A stretch of DNA of 64,000 nucleotides. It comes from Macrostomum lignano (taxonomy: Eukaryota). The translations under genes and the position numbers were made by a program. Of the stretch, positions 23,486 to 45,975 are shown in pieces. The stretch's first letter is position 1, and each line of letters opens with the position of its first letter. The DNA is taken from positions 1 through 64,000 of the forward strand of contig NIVC01003679.1 in assembly GCA_002269645.1 (NCBI GenBank), given 5' to 3'. The notes below the pieces were generated by a model, which saw only the letters and a program-made list of their open reading frames with translations, was not told the origin of the DNA and ran no database searches.

Positions 23486-24400
23486 GGCGCGGCCTGAGCA
23501 GAGACTCGGACAGGTGTGAAGGCTCGGCTATGCTGAGTTGGCTGCGATTTCAACTCGGCAGTCAGAGTCAGAGGCCGGTCGCCGAGTTGAGCAGCAAGTT
23601 ACAAATGAACTGAGTCTGCTCTGGGCATTCTAGAAGCCACCATTTTTATCTTTGTTGAGTAAAACAAACACATTCTCTGCCTAAAATTGGTTACAAATTA
23701 CAAATAACATTGAAGTGAAAAGCACACCAAGGACACACATAAGATGCTGATCTGACAAAATCGGACAAAATCAAAAGCATATCATATGCATCCATGCTTA
23801 TTATAATTCATTGTTGAAAAAGGAAAAAAATATTAATTTAAAAAACTCACAAGAACATAAAACTTATACCAAATACATAATTGGAATAGATTAAAAAACC
23901 CACAGCTACCACTAACACTATGTGTATGATTTATTCATGGACTTTTTGTATATATCTATTTACTAAATAAATATCATTATAAAATTTAAGCCAAGAAGAA
24001 ATCAGCTTAAGATGCTAACCAACTACCCTAGCTATGCTTTTGGGGGCATAATTGAAGGCATAGAAATATTAGCATTTAACGAGTTTAATTTCAAAGGATT
24101 TAAGGGATTCAAGTTTGGTTAAACTTAATAGTACTTATTAGGACAATAGTCTTGAACTAGATAGTTTCTATTTTCAAATTTAATATATCACAAAGCCTAT
24201 CTGGCTCAGGTTATTTGGAAGTTAATGATAACAATCTAAGCTATTTAATATTTTTCTCTTAGCCCCTTAGATACTGATAGATTAAATCCTATATACTAAA
24301 AATGAGTTGTCTGTATATATATCTAGATACCATTTAAATACCTAGATCTCCAACTATATCATTTGGCACAATAGGCATAGGCTCAAGTCGTGTTGAAGGT

Positions 24401-30327: not shown

Positions 30328-30820
30328 AGGACCCACCGACATCAGAGAATGACCCACCGACATCAGAGAATGACCCACCGATATCAGAGAATGACCCACT
30401 GACATCAGAGAATGACACACCGACATCAGAGAATGACTCACCGACATCAGAGAATGACACACCGATATCAGAGAATGACACACCGACATCAGAGAATGAC
30501 CCACCGACATCAGAGAATGACACACCGATATCAGAGAATGACCCACCGACATCAGATAAAGACCCACCGACATCAGAGATTGACCCACCGACATCAGAGA
30601 ATGACACACCGATATCAGAGAATGACCCACCGACATCAGAGAATGACCCACCGACATCAGAGAATGACCCATCGACATCAGATAATCACCCACCGACATC
30701 AGAGAATGACACACCGACATCAGAGAATGACCCACCGACACCAGAGAATGACCCACCGACACCAGAGAATGACCCACCGACCTTAGAGAATGACCCATCG
30801 ACACCAGAGAATGACACACC
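30328..30820. repeat. 21-bp minisatellite CCCACCGACATCAGAGAATGA
   Basis: About 23 units downstream of the TM2D3 stop. Confidence 0.95.
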
Positions 30821-30937: not shown

Positions 30938-33900
30938 CTAAGGCGCATACACGGACTCGTCAATCGGACTGATGTAGCCGACGGCAATGAGGATGGCGTC
31001 AACCAGTGACCAGACTCCGAAGCCGCCAAAGCTGAACAGCTTGCCGAGCCCCTCGCGCCACTGGCCCAGGTAGAATCTGTCCAGGCCGAAGCCGCCCAGC
31101 AGGGCTGTGCACCACATGCTCACCGACCATTTGTAGCCGCCCGACCAATCGCAGCGCAGCATCCGGCGAAACGAGCGGCGGCCAAGGCAGCTGGCGTTCA
31201 AAGCTGCCGTGCAGTTGGTCTCGTAGTGGCGGAACACCGGGTCCCGGACCTGGGGTTGCGGTAGTGTCAGCAGTAGTAATAGTAGCATCAGCAGTAGTAA
31301 TAGTAGCATCAGCAGTAGTAATAGTAGTATCAGCAATAGTAATTGCTGGACTCTGACTGACTCTGATCTGTTATGGACTGTGGGCTCTGGGGTCAGTGCT
31401 TGGGGTGGGTTCTTTGTCTGGTGAGGGTTTGCGTACTCTATGTACATCGTTGCTCATTCTCCATTCCATCGTGCATGCCTTATCTCTGTCACCCACCCCA
31501 ATGCTATGCTGCGATACTTATTAAATGTGTTTCTGATCTAAGATTGACTTCAATAAACTTTTGTCACTACTGAGTGCTAAAGCTATTGACTTTCACTTGG
31601 CGTCGCAAGCAGGATCGCGCATGCCTGCATACGGCCAGAACGTCTATTAAGATACGAGACCAACTGCCTCTGGAAAATTTGGACGAACTGCGAGCCTGGG
31701 CAGAAGTGTTCGACGCTCAGGCGAGGTCCAAATGAGTCAGAGACGAGGGGAACAACCTCGGCTTGACAGACGCATTTTTAGGATCGCTGGGCGTAAGTCA
31801 ACTTATGAAGGTCAAACAGCTAGTGGCTCCAAAGAAGATCGCGGGAATGCGGTGGGAGGACATCAAGAAAAGTCTTTTCAAGTATCTGGAGCCCAAGAAG
31901 AGACTTCTGATAGCCGAGAGGACAGCATTCATGGCCACGAGACAAGTCGATGGAGAGACTGTGGCCGGCTTCACTGCCAGATTGCGAGAACAGGCCATGG
32001 TTTGCGAGTTCGAGAAGTTCAAGGAAGAGCAGGCGGACCCGGCTGAGCAGCTGATTAAGATGCGCCTCATCGCTGGCCTAGTCAGCCAGGACACGAGAAA
32101 CAAGGTTCTGGAGCGTGAGATGACGCAAGAGCTGACTGTAGATCAGATCACTGAGTTTGTTCAGCAGCTGCAACTAGTCAACGATTGCACGACATCAACA
32201 TCGGCAGCTCAGAACATCAGAGCATTAACTGAGCCAGCTGTGCATCAGGCAGTGTCACAAGAGCTGGAGCAGCAATCGACTCACACTGTTCACCAGTTCA
32301 AGGGCAAGTGTGGAAGATGCGGCTTGGCTCAGCATCGTAATGTGTCAGAATGTCGGGCCTTGAAAGCTGCTTGCCACAAGTGCGGAAAGCAGGGACACTT
32401 TGCCAGGGCATGTCGCGGCACCGCCAAGGCGCACTTCACGGAGCCCAAAGCCAACCCGGATGAAGCTGTGTTTTTCTGCACTGAAGGCAAGCCAGCTGAC
32501 TTCTGCTTTGTGAAGATCAACGGTAAGCAGGTGAAAATGGAGAGACAGCGGCGCCTCCTACTCATTGATCTCTAAGAAAATCTGGATCGACCTTGGACGT
32601 CCAGCACTCAAGAAGCCGAAGTCACGCATGCTGTCATATGATGGTCACGTGATGAGACAGCTTGGCCTCCTACAGTGCCTGGAGGAGACTGAAGGCAACA
32701 ACGGGAGATTTGCGATAATTGAACTCCCGGTGATAGACTGTCACCAGCAATTCGGTCTCCTGGGCCGGAATCTGCTAAGCAGCCAGCAGATGCATCATTC
32801 GGAGGAGGTGAGCAACAAATATCTGAAGTTGGCTGGAATCAAGGGCGCGGTTGGAGAGATCCGACTCAAGTCCAGCGCCGAGCCAGTGTTCCAACCGGCC
32901 CGTGAGCTTCCCATGGCATTGAAACCGCTGGTGAAGAAGGAATTCGACCTGATGGAGGCGGCTGGAATTGTTGAGAAAGTGAACTCATCAGAGTGGGGCA
33001 GCCCGATTGTAGTCACCGCCAAGCCTGGCCGGGAGACCGCGAGGATCTGCGGCGACTACACCGCCGTCAATCAGCTGATTCAAGGTCAGACGTATCTCAC
33101 ACCCTCCATAGAGACGGCCTTTTCGAAAGTTGACAACAAGAAGTTCTTCTGTCACCTGGATCTGTCAGACGCCTACTACCAGATTCTCCTGGATGAGCAG
33201 TCCAAGGCGGTCACCACCATCAACACCCCGTTCGGCTGCTACCGCTTCAACAGACTGCCCTACGGTATCAAGGTGTCACCATCAGTCTTTCAGCGTGAGA
33301 TGGAGAAACTGATCGGTGAGCATCCGAGTGTTATTACGAGTACTTATCAAGATGATGTGCTGATTGGTGGGAGTTCTACGCTAGAGCTGCAGCAGATCAG
33401 GGAAGGTGTCTTGAAAAGACTGCGAGAGGCCAATGTCAAAATTAACGAGTCAAAGTGCGTTATGGAGGCTAATAGCCTGAAGTTTCTGGGGCACGTCATC
33501 GATGCAGAAGGCATCAAACCAGACCCAGGGATGGTTGAGAGAGTGCTACAGGTAGCCAGCCCCAAGAGTAAAAAGGACCTAGAGAAGTTTCTAGGACTCG
33601 CACAGTTCTACGGCAGACTGATTCCCAACTTCTCCGAGCGCTGCCGAGTATTGCATGAGCTGAGGAGGAGCGACAGTGCATTCGATTGGAGCCCGGCAGC
33701 CGAGGCTGCCTTTGCCGAAGTAAAAGCATGTCTTTCCTCCAAGCCGTTTGTCAAGCCATATGACATCAATGCGCCAGTCTGCCTTCGAGTTGATGCTAGT
33801 GAAAAATCTGTTGGCGCTGTTCTAACTCAAGTAGGTCACCCGGTGATGTACCTATCGAGGATGCTCACCTCCGCGGAGTCCAACTACTCTAACATTGAAA

Positions 33901-36866
33901 GGGAAGCGCTAGCAATAGTCTTGGCAGTTGAGCGAGCGAAGAAAATGTTGAGCAGGAAAAATTTATCTTGCAAACGGACCATGAACCTCTGAGATTTATT
34001 TTCAACCCGAGCAAAAGCCTGCCAAAAACAGCGTCAGCTAAGCTGACTAGATGGGCCTTGAGACTGTCTGCATTCGATTACTCTGTGAAATACATTCCAG
34101 GAAAGCAGCTACTGGACGCTGATGCCTTGTCAAGGCTCAACTACACTGCAGAAGTTGATGAGGACACGGTGCATCAAGCGGATTCAGTGCTGAGCGCAGA
34201 TGACTGCGACGCGTCTGGGCTGGTGACTCGGCAGGAGCTCCGGGAAGCCACACTGAACTGCTCGGTGCTGAAGAGACTGCAACAGAGAATCCAAACCGGG
34301 CGTTGGGGTCAAGTTTCTCAGGTTGAGCGACCCTTTAAAGCCTGTAGAACTTCCCTGTCGACTGATAACGGCTTGGTGATCCATGGAACTCGAGTGGTAC
34401 CTCCAGCAGTGCTTCGTCGGCGGATTCTGAAAGCGGCTCATGATGAAGTGCATCCTAGCTTTGAGAGCACTAAGGCCCACATCTGCAAGGAATTCTGGTG
34501 GCCTGGATTGGATCGAGATGTGCGACAGTATGTGGAGAGATGCCGGATATGCGCTGAGTCCCGCCCGCTGTCTAATAGCAAAATCGACATATGGCCACCG
34601 GAGACAACTCCATGGAGCCGCGTCTACATGGACCACTGCGAAGTCTCGGGAGTCGGCCTGCTGCTGCTACTGTCGGACGCTTACTTAGGCTGGCCTGAAG
34701 CCATTCCGGTTCCGGACAAGTCGACGGACACTGTCATGAGAGTCCTGAGAGCTGTCTTTGCTCGCAACGGTGTGCCGCAAACCTTGGTATCCGACCAGAT
34801 TTTAAATCGACCCGACTGTCTCAGTGGCTGAATTCAATCGGATGCAGGGAGGTCCACACTCCGCCATACCACCCGGCATCAAACGGACAGGCTGGACGGC
34901 TCGTAAGGAGCCTGAAGGACGGCCTGAGAACCTGGAACCGAGTTGTCTCATTTCAACAATTCCTGCAGAAGCTGCTCCTGACCGTGAGGACTGGCCGGCT
35001 GAGTGGATCTAGACCAGCGTCACCGGACATCATGATGTGGGGGAGGAGGCTGCGTCATCCTCTATCAATGCCCGAACAAGTCGGAGATGCCATCTGGCTT
35101 CGGATGTTCCCAGAGACCGAACCCGTCAAGGCCAAGTTCGTGGTTCAGCATCGCCAAAATACCGCTCTGGTGACGCCAACTGATTTGCCGTCTGGAGGAC
35201 TGCGCCTGGCTCACCGCAACCAATGGAGCGACCGTCCAGAGAATCAGGAGGATGACAGCACTGGCGAGCCTGAGCATCGGCAGCCCCCAGCTGGTACATC
35301 CAAGATGGTCGTTACGGACCCAGCTGACGAGCCGACGGTTCAGAATGACAGCGCGAATGCTGGTGGGCCTTCCTATGAGCTCCGACCAAAACGTCCGGTC
35401 TGCTACAAGTGCTAATTTGATGGGGGGGGGGCAGTGCTGGACTCTGACTGACTCTGATCTGTTATGGACTGTGGGCTCTGGGGTCAGTGCTTGGGGTGGG
35501 TTCTTTGTCTGGTGAGGGTTTGCGTACTCTGTGTACATCGTTGCTCATTCTCCATTCCATCGTGCCTGCCTTATCTCTGTCACCCACCCCAATGCTATGC
35601 TGCGATGCTTATTAAATGTGTTTCTGATCTAAGATTGACTTCAATAAACTTTTGTCACTTACTGAGTGCTAAAGCTATTGACTTTTAGTAATAGTAGTAT
35701 CAGCAATAGTAATAGGGTAGTATCAGCAGTAGTAACAGTAGTATCAGTAGTATCAATAGTAATAGTAGTATCAGCAATAGTAATTGCTGGACTCTGACTG
35801 ACTCTGATCTGTTATGGACTGTGGGCTCTGGGGTCAGTGCTTGAGGTGGGTTCTTTGTCTGGTGAGGGTTTGCGTACTCTGTGTACATCGTTGCTCATTC
35901 TCCATTCCATCGTGCATGCCTTATCTCTGTCACCCACCCCAATGCTATGCTGCGATGCTTATTAAATGTGTTTCTGATCTAAGATTGACTTCAATAAACT
36001 TTTGTCACTTACTGAGTGCTAAAGCTATTGACTTTCAGTAATAGTAGTATCAGCAATAGTAATAGGGTAGTATCAGCAGTAGTAACAGTAGTATCAGTAG
36101 TATCAATAGTAATAGTAGTATCAGCAATAGTAATAGGGTATTATCAGTAGTTTCAATAGTAATAGTAGTATCAGCAATAGTAATAGGGTAGTATCAGTAG
36201 TATCAATAGTAATAGTAGTATCAGCAATAGTAATACGAGCTAGGGTAGTATCAGCATTAGTAACAGTAGTATCAGTAGTATCAATAGTAATAGTAGTATC
36301 GGCAGTAGTAATAGTAGTTCAGTAGGTGTATATTGTGCAAAATCAGTAATAATAGAAATACTTTTAGTAGTATCGTAAGAATACTTGCTGTAATATAGCC
36401 AGCAGTACTCAGAGAGCACTAGTCCCACCTTGCACGTGGCTCGCTTGTCGCAGGTGTACAGCTCAGGCGGCAGCTGGTGGCAGTAGCGGCATGCTAAGGT
36501 GCGCGGCAGCGGTCCCCGATCGCCGGTGCAGTTCACATCAGGCAGCGGCTCGCAGGGCACGGCGGGCACCGCGGCGCCCAGCCGACAGCCAGCGGTGGCG
36601 TTGACGCGGCAGGACAGGCAGGCGAACGGCAGGCGGTCGCACGGCGGCGGCGGCTGGTCTGCAGTCTGCAAAAAAGTGCAAAGTGTCAGTTTGAATTGGC
36701 TGGCTGCCACAGCGCACTGCTGATCCCATCTACTCACCTGGGGACACGGCGCCGTTGCAGCCTCCGGTTCCGACTCGCTGCCGGAAGCAACCGGGACCAG
36801 CAGCTGCGGAAGCAGCAGTGCCAATAGAAGAAACGCCGGAAACTGCTGGAATTCAATGGCCGATTT
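30938..36866 (-). CDS. TM2D3: TM2-domain protein TM2D3/almondex, ~250 aa; exons 36429-36866 and 30938-31249; start codon not genomically obvious
   Basis: CDRLPFACLSC and CRYCHQLP in exon 1. CDWSGGYKWS...LGGFGLDRFYLGQWREGLGKLFSFGGFGVWSLVD in exon 2 is nearly identical to animal TM2D3. Phase-0 junction AAG|GTGGGA ... CCCCAG|GTC. Confidence 0.95.
31344..35687 (+). mobile_element. Ty3/Gypsy LTR retrotransposon (Mag-like), defective; LTRs 31344-31595 and 35435-35687
   Basis: 5' LTR TG...CA, 5-bp TSD GTAAT, PBS TGGCGTCGCAAGCAGGATCG at 31598, G-rich PPT before 35435. Gag has two zinc knuckles; RT has ICGDY and YQDD; RNase H has DAS; integrase has an HHCC zinc finger. Frameshifts at ~32550, ~33960 and ~34800; integrase SNGQAE is changed to SNGQAG. 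Confidence 0.95.
35688..36310. repeat. Compound (AGT/AAT/CAG) microsatellite hosting the Gypsy element; also present at 31262-31343
   Basis: AGTAGTATCAGCAATAGTAAT-type units. Confidence 0.9.
35785..36037 (+). mobile_element. Third (solo) LTR of the same Gypsy element
   Basis: 253 bp, TG...CA, flanked by GTAAT on both sides; 3 differences from the 3' LTR. Confidence 0.93.
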
Positions 36867-36885
36867 CTAATTTGAGTCAAAGGGT

Positions 36886-37392
36886 TTGGGAGTTCAGCTG
36901 GGGGATATGGGAGTTCAGCTGAGGGATATGGGAGTTCAGCTGGGGGATATGGGAGTTCAGCTGAGGGATATGAGAGTTCAGCTGAGGGATAGGGGATTTC
37001 AGCTGAGGAATATAAGATTTCAGCTGAAGGATATGGGATTTCAGCTGAGGGATATGGGATTTCAGCTGAGGGATATAAGATTTCAGCTGAGGATATCGGA
37101 TTTCAGCTGAGGGATATGGGATTTCAGCTGAGGGATATAAGATTTCAGCTGAGGATATCGGATTTCAGCTGAGGGATAGGGGATTTCAGCTGAGGAATAT
37201 AAGATTTCAGCTGAGGGACATGGGATTTCAGCTGAGGGATAGGGGATTTCAGCTGAGGATATCGGATTTCAGCTGAGGGATAGGGGATTTCAGCTGAGGG
37301 ATAGGGGATTTCAGCTGAGGGATAGGGGATTTCAGCTGAGGGATAGGGGATTTCAGATGAGGATATCGGATTTTAGCTGAGGGATATGGGAT
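36886..37392. repeat. 21-bp minisatellite GGAGTTCAGCTGAGGGATATG upstream of TM2D3
   Basis: About 24 units ending 18 bp from the candidate acceptor. Confidence 0.95.
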
Positions 37393-38149
37393 TACATACA
37401 TGTAATGCATACAAATAAAAAAAATCGATAATAATGAAACCAAATAATAAGATTATATTGTAAAAGTTACATGCATTGCACTAAAACACGATTGCAACGT
37501 TGACAACAGTGAAATAAAAGCACAATGATTGTAAGAAAATCTAAACATTAGTGACAAATGAATACATGAACATGCTAGCTAGTAGTACATGTAGCTCAAC
37601 AGGCCTATGGTAAATGTAAAAGTTAGAACAAGAGATTATACAGAGAGAAAAAACCACATGCTGTTCAAAAATTGGTCAGCAACAGCAGGCGATCACAGGA
37701 CAAATCAAAACAAAGCTACGAGTTTCACAAGCTGCACAAACAGTTGACCTTCAAAAGTTAGGACAAAAGAACCGAGGGAAAAATCATAAAACTGCATTGC
37801 ATTGCAGCACAAGCACTGGTGGATATGCTATTGAGACTCCGGTAGTGGAACATCTGTAGATAAAAAATGGTGCAAGCAGACAGGAATTCATTGTCCAGTG
37901 AGATTGCCGCAGCTCCAACTTAGCGATGTCTTGGAATGCAGGCGACAGCAGCTTCGGCTTCAGAGAAAAAAAGAAGAGAAAGGAGATGACAATTTACTGG
38001 CAATAGTGAAACACAGTGCGCGGCAGAGCAGTGCTCAAAATGGTGTCTGGGAAATCAGAGGTAGATTTCTATTGCAGAAAAATATTAATACGAAAATATG
38101 GTCCCACTGAAATTGGACTGAAACAGACAGAAGGGGCACAAGAGTTTTT

Positions 38150-38400
38150 TAGCGTGGGGGGCGGAAGGGATTAGTAAGGGGCGGAAAGGAATAGTAAGGG
38201 GGCGGAAAGGACTAGTTAAGGGGGCGGAGAGGACTAGTAAGGGGGCGGAAAGGACTAGTAAGGGGGGCGGAAAGGACTAGTAAGGGGGGAAAGGACTAGT
38301 AAGGGGGCGGAAAGGACTGGTAAGGGGGCGGAAAGGACTAGTAAGGGGGGCGGAAAGGACTAGTAAGAGGGCAGAAAGGACTAGTAAGGGGCGGACAATA
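38150..38400. repeat. ~21-bp minisatellite AAGGGGGCGGAAAGGACTAGT in the M-Ras 3' UTR
   Basis: About 11 units. Confidence 0.9.
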
Positions 38401-38426: not shown

Positions 38427-41400
38427 TCACATGACTCGGCATTTTCGTTTGCGCCTTGGCGGAGGCGGCGGCGCCTCGGGCGGCTGCATGCGGATGGCCT
38501 GCACCACAGAGTGGAAGGCCTCGTCCACGTTGAATGGCGGGTCTTTGGCGCTGGTCTCGATGTACTGGATCTGCGGGAAATTGGCATAGCGGCTAGTACG
38601 ATGATAGCTATGAGTGCACCACACAGCCAATCCTATGAAATGAACTAACAACCTGCATTCCTTGGCTCATCAGCAGACACCCCAGTCTCTCAGCAGACAC
38701 CCAGTCCAACAGCAGACACCCCAGTCCATCAGCAGACACCCAGTCCATCAGCAGACACCCCACTCCCTCAGCAGACACCCCAATCCCTCAGCAGACACCC
38801 ATTCCCTCAGCAGACACCCCAGTCCATCAGCAGACACCCAAGTCCATCAGCAGACACCCAGTCGAACAGCAGACACCCCAGTCCCCCAACAGACGCACGC
38901 GAAGGCGTATTCAGCACGCCAGTGAAGTATGAGACAGACCAGGCCTATGGGCTACGGTCTGCGATGCTTCACGCCTGCCCCTATCTTCAGCAGGTCAAGG
39001 CTGGAGGGAGGTCTGCACCCGCTATTTGCCGCTGGCAACCGCAGACCCCCCCCCTCACGCTGTTTCGCAAGTCGACCCAGGGTACTCGTCCCCGCGTGTG
39101 TTCAAGGCAGACCCTAGGGCTGCTGGACAGACTGGGCTCCGACGCTGGCGACCCATCCAGTGGCTTCGGCCGAACTTGGGTATGCAGGTCTGGCTTGCCA
39201 GCCTGCAGGCCGTGGTACTGCTTAACGTACCCCCTATTGCATAAGGTGTTTGACCGTACCGATGGGCTGGAAGGCCGGGGGGTTGTCCGGTCGCTAGCGG
39301 TCCTTTTCTTTTTCTTCTTTCCTCTTTCTTTTGTGACTCTGCTCACTCCTTCCCGCTTTCAGCTATGGCGTCATCCGCCTCTTTCAACCCCGCTGAAGCC
39401 GGGGCCCCGGCAACTCCGGCCGGTGACTCTGGCACCAGCGCCGCCCCACCGGGGGCAGATGGGCTTGCCGCCGGCTCCGCCGGTGACATGCCCGCACGCG
39501 CAACCGGGCCCTCCGCTGAAGCCCGACGCGCCCGTAACCAACGCCGCAACGAGCGACGACGGCGACTGCGGGATACTGCGGGCCGGCCACCGGCGGAGGG
39601 GGAACCTAGGGAGGGCGAGGCTGCTGTTGGGCCGAAAGGAGCCACAGCAACCCCTGCCCCCCAGGATACAACCCCCGCTGGTGAGCCACCCAGTAAACCT
39701 GCTACAAGCGCGGCCGGGCCTTCGGGAACCGCAGCCACCAACTACGCCTCAAAGGTCAAGCTCCAACCGGCGGTCATCGTCTTCGGGGAAGAGCAGGACC
39801 TCACGGCCGACGAGCTCGACAGTGCCTGGCGCACCATTGATGCTGCGCTCATCGACCAGCTCCTGGCGGGCCGCCCTGTGAGCGTGGTCAAGTCTGCCAA
39901 GACCGGCGGCTGCATCTTCATCTGGTGCAACTCGGAGGAGAGCAGCCGCAATCTACGCGAGCTTCTGCCAAAGCTGAACTGGCCCAAGAAGCTCGGCAAG
40001 CTCGTCTTCGCCAGCGAAGGCGAGTGACAGAAGACCCAGCGCTTTCGCGTCTGGATCCCGGCCGGCAGTGCCATTAAGTCCGGAGATCAGCTTAGGCAAA
40101 TATTGCTAAAGCTGCACCCCGACCTTGAGGTCAATGGGCTCCTACACCACGCCACTTCCCGCAAGGAGAAGGGGGCTACGGTGATCCTAGGGCTCTCTGA
40201 TGACTGGGCTAAGCGCTTGCCGCCTAAGTCCACAATTCATATTGGTCTGACTAAGCTGACCATCCTCCGTTGCGAGGAGCGGAAAGCTGATGAAGCCAAG
40301 AATGCCAAGGCTTCCGAAACCGGAACTGGGGCCCAGGCTCCTCCGGCAAAGAAGCCGAGGCAAACGGTCGACCCTATGCCCGGTAAGGCAGTTCGCGCTG
40401 CTGAAACCGGAAACCGAAATCGCAGACCCGCCAGGAGCACCCGGAGGTCCGGCCTAATACAGCGCGCGCTGGACCAGGCCAAGAGCCTTCGGGCGCATCG
40501 TGAGCGGGCCCGCGCCTCTCGCGCTCCACCCCAACAGCCAGAAGGCCAGGCTCTAAGCGGGGAGGCTCCGACCGACTGGTTCGAGTCTGTGACTCACCAG
40601 GAGGCTGGCACCACCCGCATCGACCTGACCGACGAGGCAGAGGGGACGGGCAGTGACAGCAACGAAGCACGCAGGGGAGGCGACGGTAACGTCCACGCTG
40701 GGCTCACGTCCGCGGAGGACTCCACAGCCACCCTAACTGCTGAGGACGCTGAAACTCCCATGGAGGTCTGCGGGTCACCCACCACTGAAAAGGAGGATGA
40801 TGATCTGCTCAACGATTCCCCAACTGCGTGATAATGATCAGCAACCAGGGAATCCATTGCCTGCAGATTAATCTGCAACACTGCGTCGCAGCCTCGGTCA
40901 ACCTTATGCGTTACGCCGAGCTCGACAAGCCGGGGCTCATCCTCGTCCAGGAACCCTGGACTCTGAGAGGTAAGCCTCAAAACGCCCCTGCTGGCTACAA
41001 TTGTTTTTATACTTACCCTCGCGAGGCCAACCAGCCTCCCAGAGCTTGCATCTTTGCGAGAAAAACGCTCAGTGCGTGGCTCAGATCGGACCTGTCCAAC
41101 AGGGACATCTGCGTCATCCAATCCGAGGACCTCCTTCCTGGGAAGACCACCCTCATTGCCTCGGTTTACTTACCAGGTGATGCTGCGGTCGTCCCCAGAG
41201 CCCTCGCTACGCTGGTAGAGCTTTGCTCTGCCAAAAACTACGAGCTCATGGTTGCCGGCGACATCAACGCCCACCACACTCACTGGGGCAGCACTGGCAC
41301 TAATCAGAGAGGCGAAGACCTCCTAGCCTACGTTGCCTCTACGACCCTCGAGTTCTGCAACTCTGGGTCCACCCCTACCTTTGACAACGGACGGTGGTCG

Positions 41401-44400
41401 GAGGTGATCGACGCTACGCTCGCAACGCCCAGACTCTACCAGAGTATTGGAGCGTGGCGGGTGCTTCCAGTGTCCTCACTCTCGGATCACAAGTTCATCT
41501 CCTTCAACCTAATGGCCGCGCGTTGCGCAACTCGTGTTACGTGGAGACGGAACGCCAGAAATACTGATTGGGAAACCTTCGGGCTCGCCCTGAAGGAATT
41601 CCATCGGTCTCCTGGCCAACCATCCACGATCACGTCGTGCCGAGAGGCGGATGAGTGCGCGACTGTTTTGACAGAGACGCTAACCGCCGCCTTTGAGGCG
41701 TCCTGCCCTTTAAAAGCCTATAAAGGGAAAAAAATCCGCGCCGTGGTGGAATCCCGAGCTCGGCAACCTCCGTCGCAGGGCTAAGAGACTCCACCGCAGA
41801 GCAACTAAAACTAAGAGCCCAGCGGACCAAACCGCCTATCATGAAGCAATTCATGAGTTTAAAAGGCAGGTTAGGAATGCAAAGGCTCAAAAATGGCGAC
41901 AATACTGTGAGGAGCTAGAGGGCTCACGCCCCACCTCTAGAGTTGTGAAAGCGCTCACGCTGGACAAAATGTCTAAGCTCTCCTCGGTCAAACGCACCGA
42001 CGGTACGTCCACGGACAACCCAGGGGAAACGCTTGATGTAATGCTCACTGCGTTCTTCTCCAACGAGCCAGCTAACCCGACCACTCCGGATCACTCGGAG
42101 GGAGGTCACGCGCTGGCCGCCTCTATCATCACGGAGGACCGCATCGTGAGAGCGGCTAATTCCTTCAAGCCTTTCAAAGCCCCAGGACCCGACGGCATTG
42201 TACCGGCCCTCCTAAGAGAGGCTGTTAAATGCCCAGGCTTCCTGCGCAAACTTTGCAGCCTTCTTCGGGCATGCATCACGCTTGATTATGTCCCACAGGC
42301 ATGGACCGAGGCAAAGGTGATCTTTATCCCTAAGCCAGGCCGCCCGGACTACCATTCTATCAAATCCTTCAGACCGATCAGCCTGACCTCCTCCCTGGTC
42401 AAGCTGATGGAGAGACTGGTGCTTTGGCGCCTTCTCTCTGTTGAGCTGAAGAACAAACCTCTCAGCGAGAACCAGCACGCTTTTCGGGCGGGTCGCTCCA
42501 CTGAAAGCGCGCTGCACGTCCTGGTCGATAAACTCGAGAAGGCCGTGCTTGGTAATGGCTTTGCTCTGGGGATCTTCCTGGACATCATTGGCGCCTTCGA
42601 TAACGTCCTCTTTGAGGCGTTCCGAAGAGCTCTTTGTGAGAGGCAAACGCACTCACATCTCACCAGATGGATCATGTATATGATCAGCCATCGCACGGCC
42701 ACCGCCAGTCTGCTGGGCTACCAGAGGACGGTCCCCGTCTGCAAAGGTAGCCCGCAAGGTGGGGTGCTGTCTCCAGTTCTCTGGAATATGGTCATCGATG
42801 AGCTCCTCCGGGATGTTCGGCCTGACCCCATTCTGAAAGTTGGATATGCGGACGATGTCACCGCGGTGGCATCTGGTCCGTCCCCTGATACCCTCAGGGA
42901 CCTTCTTCAGAACTTCATCTACGCCGCTGAGCAATGGGCGTACCGCTGTGGTTTAAGGCTCTCTGAGACTAAGACCGCAGCGATCATGTTCACCAGCAGG
43001 ACCAAGTGGCAGATTCGGCCGCTCACGCTTTACGGAAGGGAAATCCCCTTCTGCAAGCAGACTAAATGTCTGGGTATTACCCTGGACCACAGGCTGAACT
43101 GGTCACCCCACGTTCAAGCAAAAGCCAAAAAGGCCTTCGTAGTCCTCGCGCAATTGCGCAGGGCTGTCGGCACCACCTGGGGGCTCACCCCCAAGCGCCT
43201 CTGGTGGATCTACACTGCAATGGTTAGGCCCGCTATCTCGTATGGCGGCCTGATCTGGGCTAGCGCCCTGCAGGTAAAGACCTGTCTAGAGGCTCTCAGG
43301 AGAGCGCAAGGGCGCGCATGTCGCATGATCATGAGCGCCCCTCCGTCTGCTCCTTACGATGGCCTCAACGCCTTCCTCAACATTCCTCCGCTGGAAATCT
43401 TTGTCCGCAGGGAAGCGGCTAAGACTGCCCGCCGTCTAGCTGACGCTGGCATTCGAATCCAGCCCCATAGGGCCATGGCTAAGCGCAAGCTTTTGCCCCA
43501 CGCTGACCTCTGCCTCAAGGACTTGAGAGACAGCGGCGGGCTCCACGTCTTATCTGACGGCGAACCCCGCACTCTCAACCTCTTTCAGCGCTACAAGGTC
43601 ACCATCCCCTCTAGGGATGCTGCCAATGACCACTGGAAATTCCAGGAGGTCCATTGCTACACGGACGGATCCATCAAAGACGGTCGCGCCGGCTTTGGGG
43701 TCTGCATCATCATCGACGGCCGCGTAATTGCCACGCATGCCCAGCACACTGGTAGACTCTCCACAGTCTTCCAGAACGAAGTTCTTGCCATCAGCTCTTG
43801 CGCTGCAGAGCTGAACGCCAAGGGTACGAGAGGAAAGACTATTGTCATCCACTCCGACAGCCAAGCGGCCTTACAGGCCCTTTGCCACACCACAACGAAC
43901 TCCCGGACAGTCGCCGACTGCGCCCGGCAGCTCAACCTCCTGGCCAGTAGCAATACTGTCAGGCTGAAATGGATCCCAGGGCACGCAGGCTTTCCGGGGA
44001 ACGAGCTGGCAGACACCCTCGCCAAGAGGGGCGGCTCTGGCTCTTTCTTCGGCCCTGCCCCCCTGGTCCCTATGCCCTTGACAGTCATCAATCGTCAGAT
44101 CGACGACTGGGCTGACTCCCTCCACAGGGACAGATGGGCGGGCACCCAAAACTGCCGGCAATCTCGTGCCGCGGTTCCCTGCCCGTCTCGCAGGCTCAGA
44201 AACATCCTTCTGAACCAGAATCGGAAGGATATTCGAGCCCTTGTCATGACCCTTACTGGCCATGGCTACCTCGCCAGGCACTGCTTCCTCCGAGGTGACC
44301 TCGAGAGCGAACTTTGCCCCTTTTGCGAGTACGACAATGAAGATGCTCAGCACTTTGTTTGTCACTGCCCTTTCTTTAACAGAGACCGGCTACGCTACCT

Positions 44401-45975
44401 TGGGCCGAACCCGTCCATTGACGAGGTCTGCCAGCCCGACAGCATCCCACGGCTCATCCAGTTCCTTCGGGCGACTAGACGAGCCAGTTTCTTCCCAACG
44501 GAAGATCACGCTGCAGGACGGACCGGCGGACCACCCAGACTGGCCCCACGCCTCTGCCTGTCTGCGGACCTTCAGGGGCTAGCGGAATGGGCGACCCTCG
44601 CCTCCCCGCTGTGTCTACGGACCACCCTGCAGCTAAGTCAAGTAAGTAAGTCAAGTCCCCCAACAGACACCCCAGTCCCTCAGCAGACACCCCAGTCCAT
44701 CAGCAGACACCCCAGTCCCCCAGCAGACACCAAAGTCCATCAGCAGACAACCCAGTCCATCAGCAGACACCCCAGTCCATCAGCAGACACCCCAGTCCAT
44801 CAGCAGACACCCAAGTCCATCAGCAGACACCCCAGTCCATTAGCAGGCACCCCAGTCCATCAGCAGACACACACCAGTCCCTCAGCAGACACCCCAGTCC
44901 ATCAGCAGCCGGTACCTTGAGCTGACTGGCCAGCTGTTTGCCCTCCTCCTCGCAGACCCGCCTGGAGTGCACCAGGTCAACCTTGTTGGCCACCAGAATC
45001 ATGGGGTAGTGCTCCTTGTCTTTCACGCGCAGGATTTGCGTGTGAAAATGGCGCATATCGTCGAAGCTCTTACAATCGGTGACGGAGTACACCAGCAGGA
45101 AGCCGTCACCCTTGCGCATGTACTGCTCGCGCATGGCAGAGAACTCCTCCTGGCCTGCGGAGAGGGGACGGGCTGGGGAGCTGAGACTGAGGGAAGTTGG
45201 GATTTGAGCAATTTAAGGATAGCTCAGTAGCTCTATGGTTAGATGGATTAATAAAAGACGGGGATGGGAAGAGGCAGGTAGGGATTGGATTTCAAGGATG
45301 GGAAGAGGATGGTAGGGATGGGATTTGGAATGGGAAGAGGCTGGTAGGGATGGGATTTGGAGTACGAAGAGGCTGGTAGGGATTGGATTTAGGATGGGAA
45401 GAGGATGGTAGGGATGGGATTTGGGGTACGAAGAGGCTGGTAGGGATTGGATTTAGGATGGGAAGAGGATGGTAGGGATGGGATTTGGAGTACGAAGAGG
45501 CTGGTAGGGATTGGATTTAGGATGGGAAGAGGATGGTAGGGATGGGATTTGGGGTACGAAGAGGCTGGTAGGGATGGGATTTGGAATGGGAAGAGGCTGG
45601 TAGTGATGGGATTTGGGGTACGAAGAGGCTGGTAGTGATGGGATTTGGGGTGGGAAGAGGCTGGTAGTGATGGGATTTGGGGTGGAAAGAGGCTGGTAGG
45701 GATGGGATTTGGAATGGAACGAGACCAGTAGGGATCCTCACAAGCAGCAAGGCAGCAGACCTACCAGCTGTATCCAGGACATCCAGCAAGTACCAGTCGC
45801 TGCCAATCATCTTGTACTGGATGTAGGAGTCCTCAATGGTTGGGTCATAGTCCTGCACAAACATCTTCTGGAAGAACTGAATGGTGAGTGCACTCTTGCC
45901 AACACCGCCATTGCCAACTACTACTAGCTTGTAAGTTTTGATGTTCTCGTCACAGTTGGGAGGTCTGTTGGCCAT
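38427..45975 (-). CDS. MRAS: M-Ras small GTPase, 197 aa; exons 45765-45975, 44916-45154, 38427-38570
   Basis: [57 protein letters not shown] and ETSAKDPP (the FFQK and SAKDPP motifs are M-Ras specific); polybasic RRKRK plus CAAX CRVM; GT-AG junctions with phases 1 and 0. Confidence 0.95.
38668..38894. repeat. 20-bp minisatellite CAGCAGACACCCCAGTCCAT, left part
   Basis: Continues at 44654-44908 beyond the LINE. Confidence 0.93.
38895..44653 (+). mobile_element. Full-length LINE with APE endonuclease, RT, RNase H and CCHC finger (R1/LOA/I group), 5759 bp
   Basis: 15-bp TSD AGTCCCCCAACAGAC (38880-38894 and 44654-44668). ORF1 39365-40831 has one in-frame TGA at 40025. ORF2 starts at ATG 40834: QINLQH, VQEPW, GDINAH, SDH; [17 protein letters not shown]; [20 protein letters not shown]; CPFC...H...C. 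One extra A in the run at 41728-41734. (TAAG/CAAGT) tail. Confidence 0.95.
44654..44908. repeat. 20-bp minisatellite, right part
   Basis: Same unit as 38668-38894; abuts the M-Ras exon 2 donor. Confidence 0.93.
45255..45718. repeat. 32-bp minisatellite in M-Ras intron 1
   Basis: Unit GGGATGGGATTTGGGGTACGAAGAGGCTGGTA. Confidence 0.92.

What the first reader, a model, noticed from the sequence alone, without database searches (positions are those of the whole stretch)
36824..36870. TM2D3 has no ATG: a spliced-leader AUG would start it exactly in frame
Upstream of the signal-peptide codons the frame reads TAG|AAA TCG GCC ATT GAA TTC CAG CAG TTT CCG GCG TTT CTT CTA TTG..., with no ATG before the in-frame TAG, whose AG (36867-36868) is a plausible acceptor. 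Flatworm spliced leaders end in AUG that can initiate translation (established). Joining one here gives MKSAIEFQQFPAFLLLALLLPQLLVPVASG, a well-formed signal peptide, so the gene would depend on trans-splicing for its start codon. Alternative: a cis micro-exon ATG TAT|GTAATC at 37401-37396 is also in frame but has a weak donor.
Basis: partly seen in the sequence, partly recalled or inferred. Interest (0 to 1): 0.78.

Follow-up and report, generated by a model that had tools for sequence, protein, structure and literature searches.

The report
Flatworm TM2D3 gene lacking its own ATG
The Macrostomum lignano TM2D3 gene has no start codon of its own, so it most likely takes its AUG from the trans-spliced leader, a mechanism already known in flatworms and not shown directly here.

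Summary
The window is Macrostomum lignano (Mlig_3_7 contig NIVC01003679.1). A three-exon TM2D3 orthologue lies on the minus strand. Its first coding exon carries the signal peptide, holds no ATG in any frame, and is closed upstream by an in-frame TAG (36869-36867).

- All four public gene models for this gene, from two homeologous copies and two assemblies, lack an initiator Met.
- The published 35-nt M. lignano spliced leader ends in ATG.
- Joining it after any of three AGs (36868/7, 36847/6, 36844/3) puts that ATG in frame with a good signal peptide.
- No other in-phase ATG...GTRAG exon exists in the 1.56 kb back to the upstream same-strand M-Ras gene.

I could not reach any M. lignano RNA data, so the trans-splice junction itself is not shown.

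Initiation from the leader's AUG has been established in flatworms since 2006 and is already noted for Macrostomum. This is a new member of a known kind, useful mainly for correcting annotation.

The parts
36867..36869 (-). In-frame TAG that closes the ORF upstream.
   Evidence: Conserved in homeolog L003. It does not match the published [T/C]TNCAG motif and lies only 10 nt from the best branch-point-like TTGAC (read from the sequence).
36846..36851 (-). TTCCAG|, the best-consensus candidate acceptor (AG 36847-36846). Leader ATG plus CAG TTT CCG... gives MQFPAFLLL..., in frame.
   Evidence: It is the only [T/C]TNCAG match within about 180 nt of the ORF start, and the only one whose leader-AUG frame stays open into TM2D3 (motif from PMC8629364). 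Conserved in L003.
36843..36845 (-). Second CAG of a CAGCAG tandem, the third in-frame candidate acceptor (gives MFPAFLLL...).
   Evidence: The GenBank 5'-partial CDS starts 4-6 nt downstream of it, at 36836.
36738..36866 (-). TM2D3 coding exon 1 at its maximal extent. It holds the n-region, h-region (FPAFLLLALLLPQLLVPV) and c-region (ASG|S) of the signal peptide. It has no ATG in any frame.
   Evidence: hydropathy. Donor is CAG|GTGAGT at 36738|36737.
36666..36737 (-). Intron 1, 72 nt, GTGAGT...TTTTTTGCAG.
   Evidence: It is 100% identical in L003.
36429..36665 (-). TM2D3 exon 2, the Cys-rich extracellular region.
   Evidence: The translation is identical to GenBank PAA50288.1.
31250..36428 (-). 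Intron 2, 5.2 kb. It contains an LTR-type retroelement on the opposite strand, with RT, RNase H and integrase ORFs at 31763-34831 (+). The element is absent from the homeolog.
30938..31249 (-). TM2D3 exon 3: the TM2 domain with the DRF motif, and the stop TAG at 30940-30938.
   Evidence: Pfam PF05154, E=9e-14.
36887..37393 (-). 21-bp tandem repeat array of 24 copies, ending 18 nt upstream of the TAG. It is a presumed outron or intercistronic spacer. It holds 23 YAG sites, all out of frame with TM2D3.
   Evidence: The array is about 1.4 kb in the homeolog.
37396..37401 (-). Rejected.
   Evidence: L003 reads CTGTAT|GAAATC, so both the ATG and the GT donor are lost. The donor does not fit GT[G/A]AG.
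38427..38570 (-). Last coding exon of the upstream same-strand M-Ras orthologue (stop TGA 38429-38427). It is followed by about 1 kb of sequence that is highly conserved between homeologs, read here as a putative 3'UTR.

Best explanation
The gene is the M. lignano orthologue of TM2D3 (almondex family). Its pre-mRNA is transcribed through the 21-bp repeat array, possibly as the downstream member of an M-Ras/TM2D3 transcription unit. The 35-nt spliced leader, which ends ...UUGCAUG, is trans-spliced onto an acceptor AG just upstream of the signal-peptide codons. The likeliest acceptor is TTCCAG| at 36846; the alternatives are TAG| at 36867 and CAG| at 36843. All three acceptors end a codon, so the leader's terminal AUG becomes the in-frame initiator. 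It yields M(KSAIEFQ)QFPAFLLLALLLPQLLVPVASG|SE..., a cleavable signal peptide.

Shown:
- the gene structure;
- the absence of any genomic ATG;
- the in-frame geometry;
- the leader sequence;
- conservation in the homeolog.

Inferred:
- that the leader is actually added here;
- which AG is used;
- that ribosomes start at the leader's AUG;
- the operon link to M-Ras.
For: 1. Species and leader. The window equals M. lignano NIVC01003679.1. The leader ends in ATG (PMC8629364).
2. No ATG in any frame from 37221 to 36738, with an in-frame TAG 9 codons before the h-region.
3. Without the leader, the first AUGs of the mRNA open 1-aa and 9-aa out-of-frame ORFs. The first in-frame Met is codon 152, which would give a 74-aa fragment with no signal peptide.
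4. GenBank PAA50288.1 and PAA88645.1 are both flagged 'partial'. UniProt A0A1I8IMG3 and A0A1I8I4T0 also lack Met. The Mlig_3_7 pipeline trimmed the leader before calling ORFs with TransDecoder (PMC5730564), which would produce exactly this kind of partial CDS.
5. Homeolog L003 keeps TAG, CAG and CAG, the open frame and the lack of ATG, and the protein is intact. dN/dS is 0.44 overall and 0.25 in exons 2-3.
6. No conserved cis exon. 20 in-phase ATG...GT candidates lie in 38426-36870 and none has a GT[G/A]AG donor.
7. TTCCAG| matches the published trans-splice acceptor motif.
8. About 30% of M. lignano genes are trans-spliced, with enrichment among conserved genes. The upstream same-strand M-Ras stop codon is 1,560 nt away, of which 746 nt is tandem repeat. 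That puts the repeat-adjusted distance under the published 1-kb operon threshold.
9. [quoted passage not shown] It is noted as the likely start codon in Macrostomum.
Against: - No leader-containing read or transcript for this gene could be examined. The protein collection holds no M. lignano RNA-derived product for TM2D3 or for M-Ras.
- The GenBank partial CDS starts at GCG 36836, which does not directly follow an AG. The annotated 5' end therefore does not document a trans-splice site. In two calibration genes the partial CDS starts 1 and 3 nt after a consensus acceptor.
- The locus tag ends in 'g1', so the annotators did not join TM2D3 to an upstream gene.
- A related Macrostomum transcript (L001, SRR28338165) carries its own ATG and 151 nt of non-leader 5' sequence.
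- The 23 YAG sites in the repeat array could compete as unproductive acceptors.
- The in-frame placement of the AGs is not statistically unusual.
Confidence: 0.7

Rival explanations
1. An unannotated upstream cis-spliced exon supplies the ATG. This could be the reader's micro-exon at 37401-37396 or another exon further upstream.
For: The ATGTAT|GTAATC micro-exon exists and is in phase. 20 in-phase ATG...GT candidates exist between the M-Ras stop and exon 1. An old ML2 model (A0A1I8JN80) strings M-Ras 3' sequence onto TM2D3 exon 2.
Against: None of the 20 candidates has the GT[G/A]AG donor. In homeolog L003 the micro-exon reads CTGTAT|GAAATC. The ATG at 37797 is ACG there, and its frame is broken by indels. 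The RNA-seq-based GenBank models found no upstream exon in either copy. The ML2 chimera reads both genes out of frame, so it looks like an artefact.
Confidence: 0.1
2. Translation starts at a near-cognate non-AUG codon inside exon 1. The candidates are AUU 36857-36855 in a Kozak-like context (GCC AUU G), or the UUG/CUG codons of the h-region. This would work on an mRNA whether or not it carries the leader.
For: ATT has a purine at -3 and G at +4 in both homeologs (GCCATTG and ACCATTG). Non-AUG initiation is documented in many eukaryotes.
Against: AUU is among the weakest near-cognates (general knowledge). If the leader is added at any of the three AGs, its AUG lies upstream and in frame and would be met first. 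Nothing here requires this mechanism.
Confidence: 0.08
3. The locus is decaying or makes only a truncated product, for example the 74-aa TM2-only fragment from Met152. The missing ATG would then be a lesion, not a mechanism.
For: dN/dS in exon 1 is high at about 0.74, based on 9 changes. A 5-kb retroelement sits in intron 2. M. lignano is a recent polyploid with redundant copies.
Against: Both homeologs keep all three exons open, the splice sites intact and the TM2/DRF region unchanged, with dN/dS 0.25 in exons 2-3. The signal peptide remains well formed. Loss of the ATG is shared by both copies, so it predates their divergence without further decay.
Confidence: 0.07
4. An assembly or sequencing error hides a genomic ATG, for example if the ATT is really ATG.
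For: The long-read assemblies of this repeat-rich polyploid genome contain errors. The ML2 models show frameshifts.
Against: Three independent sequences encode Ile at that codon and lack ATG. They are the window, homeolog NIVC01000180.1, and the ML2-derived UniProt A0A1I8IMG3 (KSTIEFQQ...).
Confidence: 0.02

Closest known systems
Schistosoma mansoni mRNAs that use the spliced leader's 3'-terminal AUG as initiator methionine (Cheng, Cohen, Ndegwa and Davis, J Biol Chem 2006; summarised in PMC9851317 and PMC12582326)
   Same: The flatworm leader ends in AUG. The acceptor places that AUG in frame with an ORF that has no upstream AUG of its own. The N-terminus, here a signal peptide, is completed by the donated Met.
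   Different: The species is a free-living macrostomorphan. Nothing is shown experimentally here, neither the junction nor initiation. Three alternative in-frame acceptors lie within 24 nt.
slORFs: ORFs created by trans-splicing of a leader (slORFfinder, PMC9851317)
   Same: The same concept applies: the start codon is contributed by the leader, and standard annotation misses it.
   Different: The slORFs found with that tool, in nematodes, Oikopleura and trypanosomes, mostly use NUG codons inside the leader. Many are out of frame or are N-terminal variants of ORFs that have their own AUG. Here the AUG is canonical and appears obligatory.
M. lignano spliced-leader trans-splicing and operons (Wudarski et al. 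2017, PMC5730564; Ustyantsev and Berezikov 2021, PMC8629364)
   Same: The leader sequence is the same. The acceptor motif [T/C]TNCAG is present at 36851-36846. A conserved gene lies downstream of a same-strand gene across a repeat-rich spacer that is under 1 kb after removing repeats.
   Different: Those papers do not analyse use of the leader's AUG as a start codon. This gene is tagged g1 and 'partial' in GenBank, and I could not see whether it is flagged as trans-spliced.
M-Ras paralogue BOX15_Mlig017889g2 (PAA protein P0124, locus L004)
   Same: A 5'-partial GenBank CDS starts just after a consensus acceptor (TTTCAG| at L004 5997). The leader's ATG would be in frame there too (MSRMAVHPP...).
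   Different: That gene has its own genomic ATG three codons downstream, so the leader's AUG is optional there. TM2D3 has none.
TM2D3 / almondex (TM2 domain-containing protein 3)
   Same: It has a signal peptide, a Cys-rich ectodomain and a C-terminal TM2 domain with the DRF motif (GLDRFYLG). The best non-Macrostomum hits are TM2D3 proteins at 40-49% identity.
   Different: In the orthologues inspected here the initiator Met is present in the sequence, including a related Macrostomum sp..

Membership tests
Flatworm mRNAs initiated at the spliced leader's AUG (Cheng et al. 2006 type) | The organism's spliced leader ends in AUG immediately before the donor site | tested here: met
   The window is M. 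lignano. The published leader is CGGTCTCTTACTGCGAAGACTCAATTTATTGCATG, followed by GTAAG (PMC8629364). No leader RNA gene lies in the window itself.
Flatworm mRNAs initiated at the spliced leader's AUG (Cheng et al. 2006 type) | The mature mRNA carries the leader joined at an acceptor upstream of the ORF | not testable with these tools
   No M. lignano transcript or read data could be reached. There is only indirect support: the acceptor motif and 5'-partial annotations.
Flatworm mRNAs initiated at the spliced leader's AUG (Cheng et al. 2006 type) | The leader's AUG is in frame with the main ORF with no intervening stop | tested here: met
   True for acceptors ending at 36867, 36846 and 36843.
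Flatworm mRNAs initiated at the spliced leader's AUG (Cheng et al. 2006 type) | No genomically encoded in-frame AUG is available for the full-length protein | tested here: met
   No ATG in any frame from 37221 to 36738. The first in-frame Met is codon 152. The same holds in homeolog L003.
Flatworm mRNAs initiated at the spliced leader's AUG (Cheng et al. 2006 type) | Ribosomes initiate at the leader's AUG | not testable with these tools
   This needs ribosome profiling or reporter assays.
TM2D3 / almondex | C-terminal TM2 domain: two transmembrane helices flanking a DRF motif | tested here: met
   Pfam PF05154, E=9.4e-14, residues 166-209. GLDRFYLG is present.
TM2D3 / almondex | Closest to TM2D3 orthologues rather than to other TM2D paralogues | tested here: met
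   Every named non-Macrostomum hit in the top 120 that carries a functional name is called TM2D3, with E=1e-49 to 1e-42 and 36-49% identity. No explicit phylogeny against TM2D1 or TM2D2 was made.
TM2D3 / almondex | N-terminal cleavable signal peptide | tested here: inconclusive
   The hydropathy profile and small residues at -3 and -1 (A-S-G|S) fit a signal peptide. No dedicated predictor was available, and the Met is not encoded.
M. lignano operon, downstream gene | Same-strand upstream gene within 1 kb after removing repeats (criterion of PMC8629364) | tested here: met
   From the M-Ras stop at 38427 to the acceptor at 36867 is 1,560 nt, less 746 nt of tandem repeats, giving about 814 nt. 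The distance is shorter still if the conserved 1 kb is the M-Ras 3'UTR.
M. lignano operon, downstream gene | The downstream gene is trans-spliced and a polycistronic precursor exists | not testable with these tools
   No RNA data. GenBank tags the gene g1, and M-Ras is not annotated in either copy.

The most novel reading that the evidence does not exclude
TM2D3 in the M. lignano lineage lost its genomic start codon. The in-frame ATT at 36857-36855 still sits in a Kozak-like context and may be the relic of that codon. Since before the homeolog split, the gene would have depended entirely on the spliced leader for initiation. A cluster of three frame-compatible acceptors would keep the product in frame whichever AG is chosen. 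If many of the '5'-partial' CDSs in the M. lignano annotation share this cause, a sizeable class of obligately leader-initiated genes is being mis-annotated.
Probability: 0.25. Interest if true: 0.45.

Novelty: new member of a known kind. Interest (0 to 1): 0.3.

Why it matters
If confirmed, this conserved Notch-pathway/Alzheimer-linked gene family member (from general knowledge) can make its secreted-pathway protein in M. lignano only after trans-splicing. Its expression would then be strictly coupled to the spliced-leader machinery.

In practice it explains why GenBank and UniProt list the protein as partial or Met-less, and it shows how to fix this: put the leader's ATG back before calling ORFs.

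It also points to a systematic artefact. Pipelines that trim the full leader, ATG included, will turn every obligately leader-initiated gene into a '5'-partial' model.

It does not open a new mechanism. The phenomenon has been documented in flatworms since 2006.

Tried and rejected
1. Direct transcript evidence.
- Exact look-ups of the MKSAIEF... and KSAIEF... proteins found nothing.
- A search with the N-terminal 123 aa found no RNA-derived M. lignano product. The M-Ras search gave the same result.

2. Supplementary tables searched for Mlig001603, Mlig032220 or TM2D3. There were no hits or no files held for Wudarski 2017, Grudniewska 2018, Ustyantsev 2021 and Boroni 2018. Wasik 2015 is not held.

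3. The related Macrostomum transcript L001. Its exon 1 cannot be aligned to M. lignano; homology starts only in exon 2. It says nothing about the acceptor, carries no leader sequence, and has its own ATG.

4. UniProt model starts. A0A1I8IMG3 begins exactly after TAG|, and A0A1I8I4T0 exactly after CAG| at 36804. I considered these as transcript evidence and rejected that. They disagree with each other and could come from an ab initio predictor placing acceptor-bounded exons.

5. 'All AGs in frame' as a sign of selection. Rejected, because the baseline gives P about 0.1.

6. Rejected on donor quality and on non-conservation in the homeolog.

7. A leader RNA gene or other known ncRNA in the window. 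None was found.
Full report
**What is there**

The window is Macrostomum lignano. The region around the finding is identical to GenBank contig NIVC01003679.1 of assembly GCA_002269645.1 (Mlig_3_7).

A three-exon gene lies on the minus strand:
- exon 1, at most 36866-36738;
- a 72-nt intron, GTGAGT...TTTTTTGCAG;
- exon 2, 36665-36429;
- a 5.2-kb intron carrying an antisense LTR-type retroelement;
- exon 3, 31249-30938, ending in TAG.

The product has a TM2 domain (Pfam PF05154, E=9e-14). Its named hits outside Macrostomum are TM2D3 proteins at 36-49% identity. It is 100% identical to GenBank PAA50288.1, 'BOX15_Mlig001603g1, partial'.

**Checking the observation**

- TAG is 36869-36867, followed by AAA TCG GCC ATT GAA TTC CAG CAG TTT CCG GCG TTT CTT CTA TTG.
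- There is no ATG in any frame between 37221, inside the upstream repeat array, and the exon-1 donor at 36738.
- Prefixing ATG gives MKSAIEFQQFPAFLLLALLLPQLLVPVASG|SE.... This has a hydrophobic core peaking at 3.2 on the Kyte-Doolittle scale and small residues at -3 and -1.
- The micro-exon ATGTAT|GTAATC is at 37401-37396.

An mRNA without a leader would be unproductive. Its first AUGs open ORFs of 1 and 9 codons, out of frame. The first in-frame Met is codon 152, which would give a 74-aa fragment with no signal peptide.

**Independent sequences agree**

A second, syntenic copy is 90-94% identical: homeolog NIVC01000180.1, locus L003. It has the same TAG|AAA, the same CAGCAG and no ATG, and it encodes KSTIEFQQFPASLLL....

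Its GenBank protein (PAA88645.1) is also 'partial'. Two UniProt models from the older ML2 assembly (A0A1I8IMG3, A0A1I8I4T0) also lack Met. A sequencing error is therefore very unlikely.

The two copies differ by 7 synonymous and 9 nonsynonymous changes. dN/dS is 0.44 overall and 0.25 in exons 2-3, and all splice sites are intact. The numbers are small, but nothing suggests a pseudogene.

**The premises about the leader**

The M. lignano spliced leader is CGGTCTCTTACTGCGAAGACTCAATTTATTGCATG, followed by GTAAG. About 30% of genes receive it, and conserved genes are enriched among them. The commonest acceptor motif is [T/C]TNCAG (PMC8629364).

All reported flatworm leaders end in AUG (PMC12582326). 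In S. mansoni this AUG is in frame in 28% of trans-spliced mRNAs, and more than 40 cDNAs need it (Cheng et al. 2006, as summarised in PMC9851317). The M. cliftonense / M. hystrix genome paper states that the Macrostomum leader likely contains the translation start codon (PMC10468722).

**Which acceptor**

Three AGs upstream of the hydrophobic core end a codon:
- TAG| at 36867, giving MKSAIEFQQFPAF...;
- TTCCAG| at 36846, giving MQFPAF...;
- CAG| at 36843, giving MFPAF....

Only TTCCAG| fits the published motif. It is also the only motif match between the M-Ras stop and the exon-1 donor whose leader-AUG frame stays open into TM2D3.

The best branch-point-like sequence is TTGAC, with its A at 36877. 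That A is 10 nt from the TAG's G and 31 nt from the CAG's G. By the general rule that AGs very close to the branch point are skipped (established knowledge, not tested here), this favours the CAG.

The GenBank partial CDS starts at GCG 36836. That is 4-9 nt after the CAGs and 28-30 nt after the TAG.

Two calibration genes from the same annotation behave as follows. The partial CDS of the SAS-6 copy in L003 starts 1 nt after TTGCAG|. That of the M-Ras paralogue BOX15_Mlig017889g2 starts 3 nt after TTTCAG|.

None of this is decisive. The frame argument holds for all three. That all of them are in frame is not significant in itself, with P about 0.1 against this gene's own baseline.

**Rivals**

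*Cis micro-exon.* In L003 it reads CTGTAT|GAAATC, so both the ATG and the GT are gone.

*Any other upstream cis exon.* I listed every ATG-initiated, stop-free, phase-compatible stretch ending at a GT between the M-Ras stop (38427) and exon 1. There are 20, and none has a GT[G/A]AG donor. The most donor-like one (GTGAAA at 37728) starts at an ATG that is ACG in L003, and its frame is broken there by indels. The RNA-seq-guided GenBank models contain no upstream exon in either copy.

*Non-AUG initiation.* It cannot be excluded. ATT 36857-36855 has a purine at -3 and G at +4 in both copies. It is not needed if the leader is added.

*Decay or truncated product.* The intact ORFs and splice sites in both homeologs argue against it.

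**Context**

The next gene upstream on the same strand is an M-Ras orthologue (Pfam Ras, E=1e-44; 96% identical to UniProt A0A1I8IBI8). Its stop is at 38429-38427.

About 1 kb of sequence follows that is well conserved between the homeologs and looks like a 3'UTR. Then comes the 21-bp repeat array (36887-37393), which ends 18 nt before the TAG.

After subtracting the tandem repeats, the gap is about 0.8 kb or less. That is under the 1-kb operon threshold of PMC8629364, which also notes that operon spacers in this genome are repeat-rich. An M-Ras/TM2D3 operon is therefore plausible but unproven. GenBank tags TM2D3 as g1 and does not annotate M-Ras at all in either copy.

**Limits**

I could not reach any M. 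lignano read or transcript.
- The protein collection has no RNA-derived M. lignano product for TM2D3 or M-Ras.
- The supplements that were held contain no entry for this gene.
- The one related transcript (L001, a Macrostomum-like species, 82% aa identity) has its own ATG and a non-alignable exon 1. It shows only that this N-terminus evolves fast.

**Verdict**

The phenomenon is already known, so this is a new example with annotation value rather than a discovery of kind.

Noticed in passing
window 36855-36857 (minus strand): The in-frame ATT sits in a Kozak-like context, GCC ATT G (ACC ATT G in homeolog L003). It could be the relic of an ancestral ATG start codon, or a weak near-cognate start.
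   Followed up: partly
window 23592-23594 (minus strand) vs L003 19031-19033: In L003 the 5'-partial CDS of the downstream SAS-6 gene starts 1 nt after a consensus acceptor, TTGCAG|. In the window copy the same site reads TTGCTG, so the AG is lost, and GenBank starts that CDS at the genomic ATG (23485). The homeologs may therefore differ in trans-splice site use.
   Followed up: partly
window 31345-36134, ORFs 31763-34831 (+): An LTR-type retroelement (RVT_1, RT_RNaseH, Integrase_H2C2) is inserted antisense in TM2D3 intron 2. It has about 350-bp terminal repeats, duplicated at one end, and is absent from homeolog L003. One UniProt model (A0A1I8I4T0) reads from exon 2 into it.
   Followed up: partly
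window 38900-44920 (+): A non-LTR (LINE-like) retrotransposon with an endonuclease, RT and RNase H is inserted in an intron of the M-Ras gene. It is flanked by 20-bp-period repeats and absent from L003. M-Ras is not annotated in GenBank in either copy.
   Followed up: partly
window 30330-30820, 31267-31343, 36037-36322, 36887-37393, 38157-38395, 38668-38894: At least six separate tandem arrays with periods of 20-21 bp surround these two genes, in the 3'UTR, an intron and the intergenic spacer. Some differ in unit sequence and others share a related unit. Array lengths differ between the homeologs.
   Followed up: no
L004 5990-6010 (M. lignano NIVC01004036.1): In the M-Ras paralogue BOX15_Mlig017889g2, TTTCAG|TCT AGA ATG GCA would put the leader's ATG in frame three codons before the genomic ATG. 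This is an optional N-terminal MSR extension, and GenBank annotates the CDS as 5'-partial.
   Followed up: partly
window 38482-38431, 38047-38009 and 36676-36495 (minus strand): UniProt A0A1I8JN80 (ML2 assembly) is a chimeric model. It joins the last M-Ras exon read out of frame, a 39-nt piece of its putative 3'UTR, and TM2D3 exon 2. It is probably an artefact, but it would fit read-through transcription across both genes.
   Followed up: partly
L001 1-210 (Logan SRR28338165): The related Macrostomum-like TM2D3 transcript has its own ATG at 152, inside a GC-rich CGG/CTG expansion. It also has 151 nt of non-leader upstream sequence with an open 69-codon frame of unknown meaning.
   Followed up: partly
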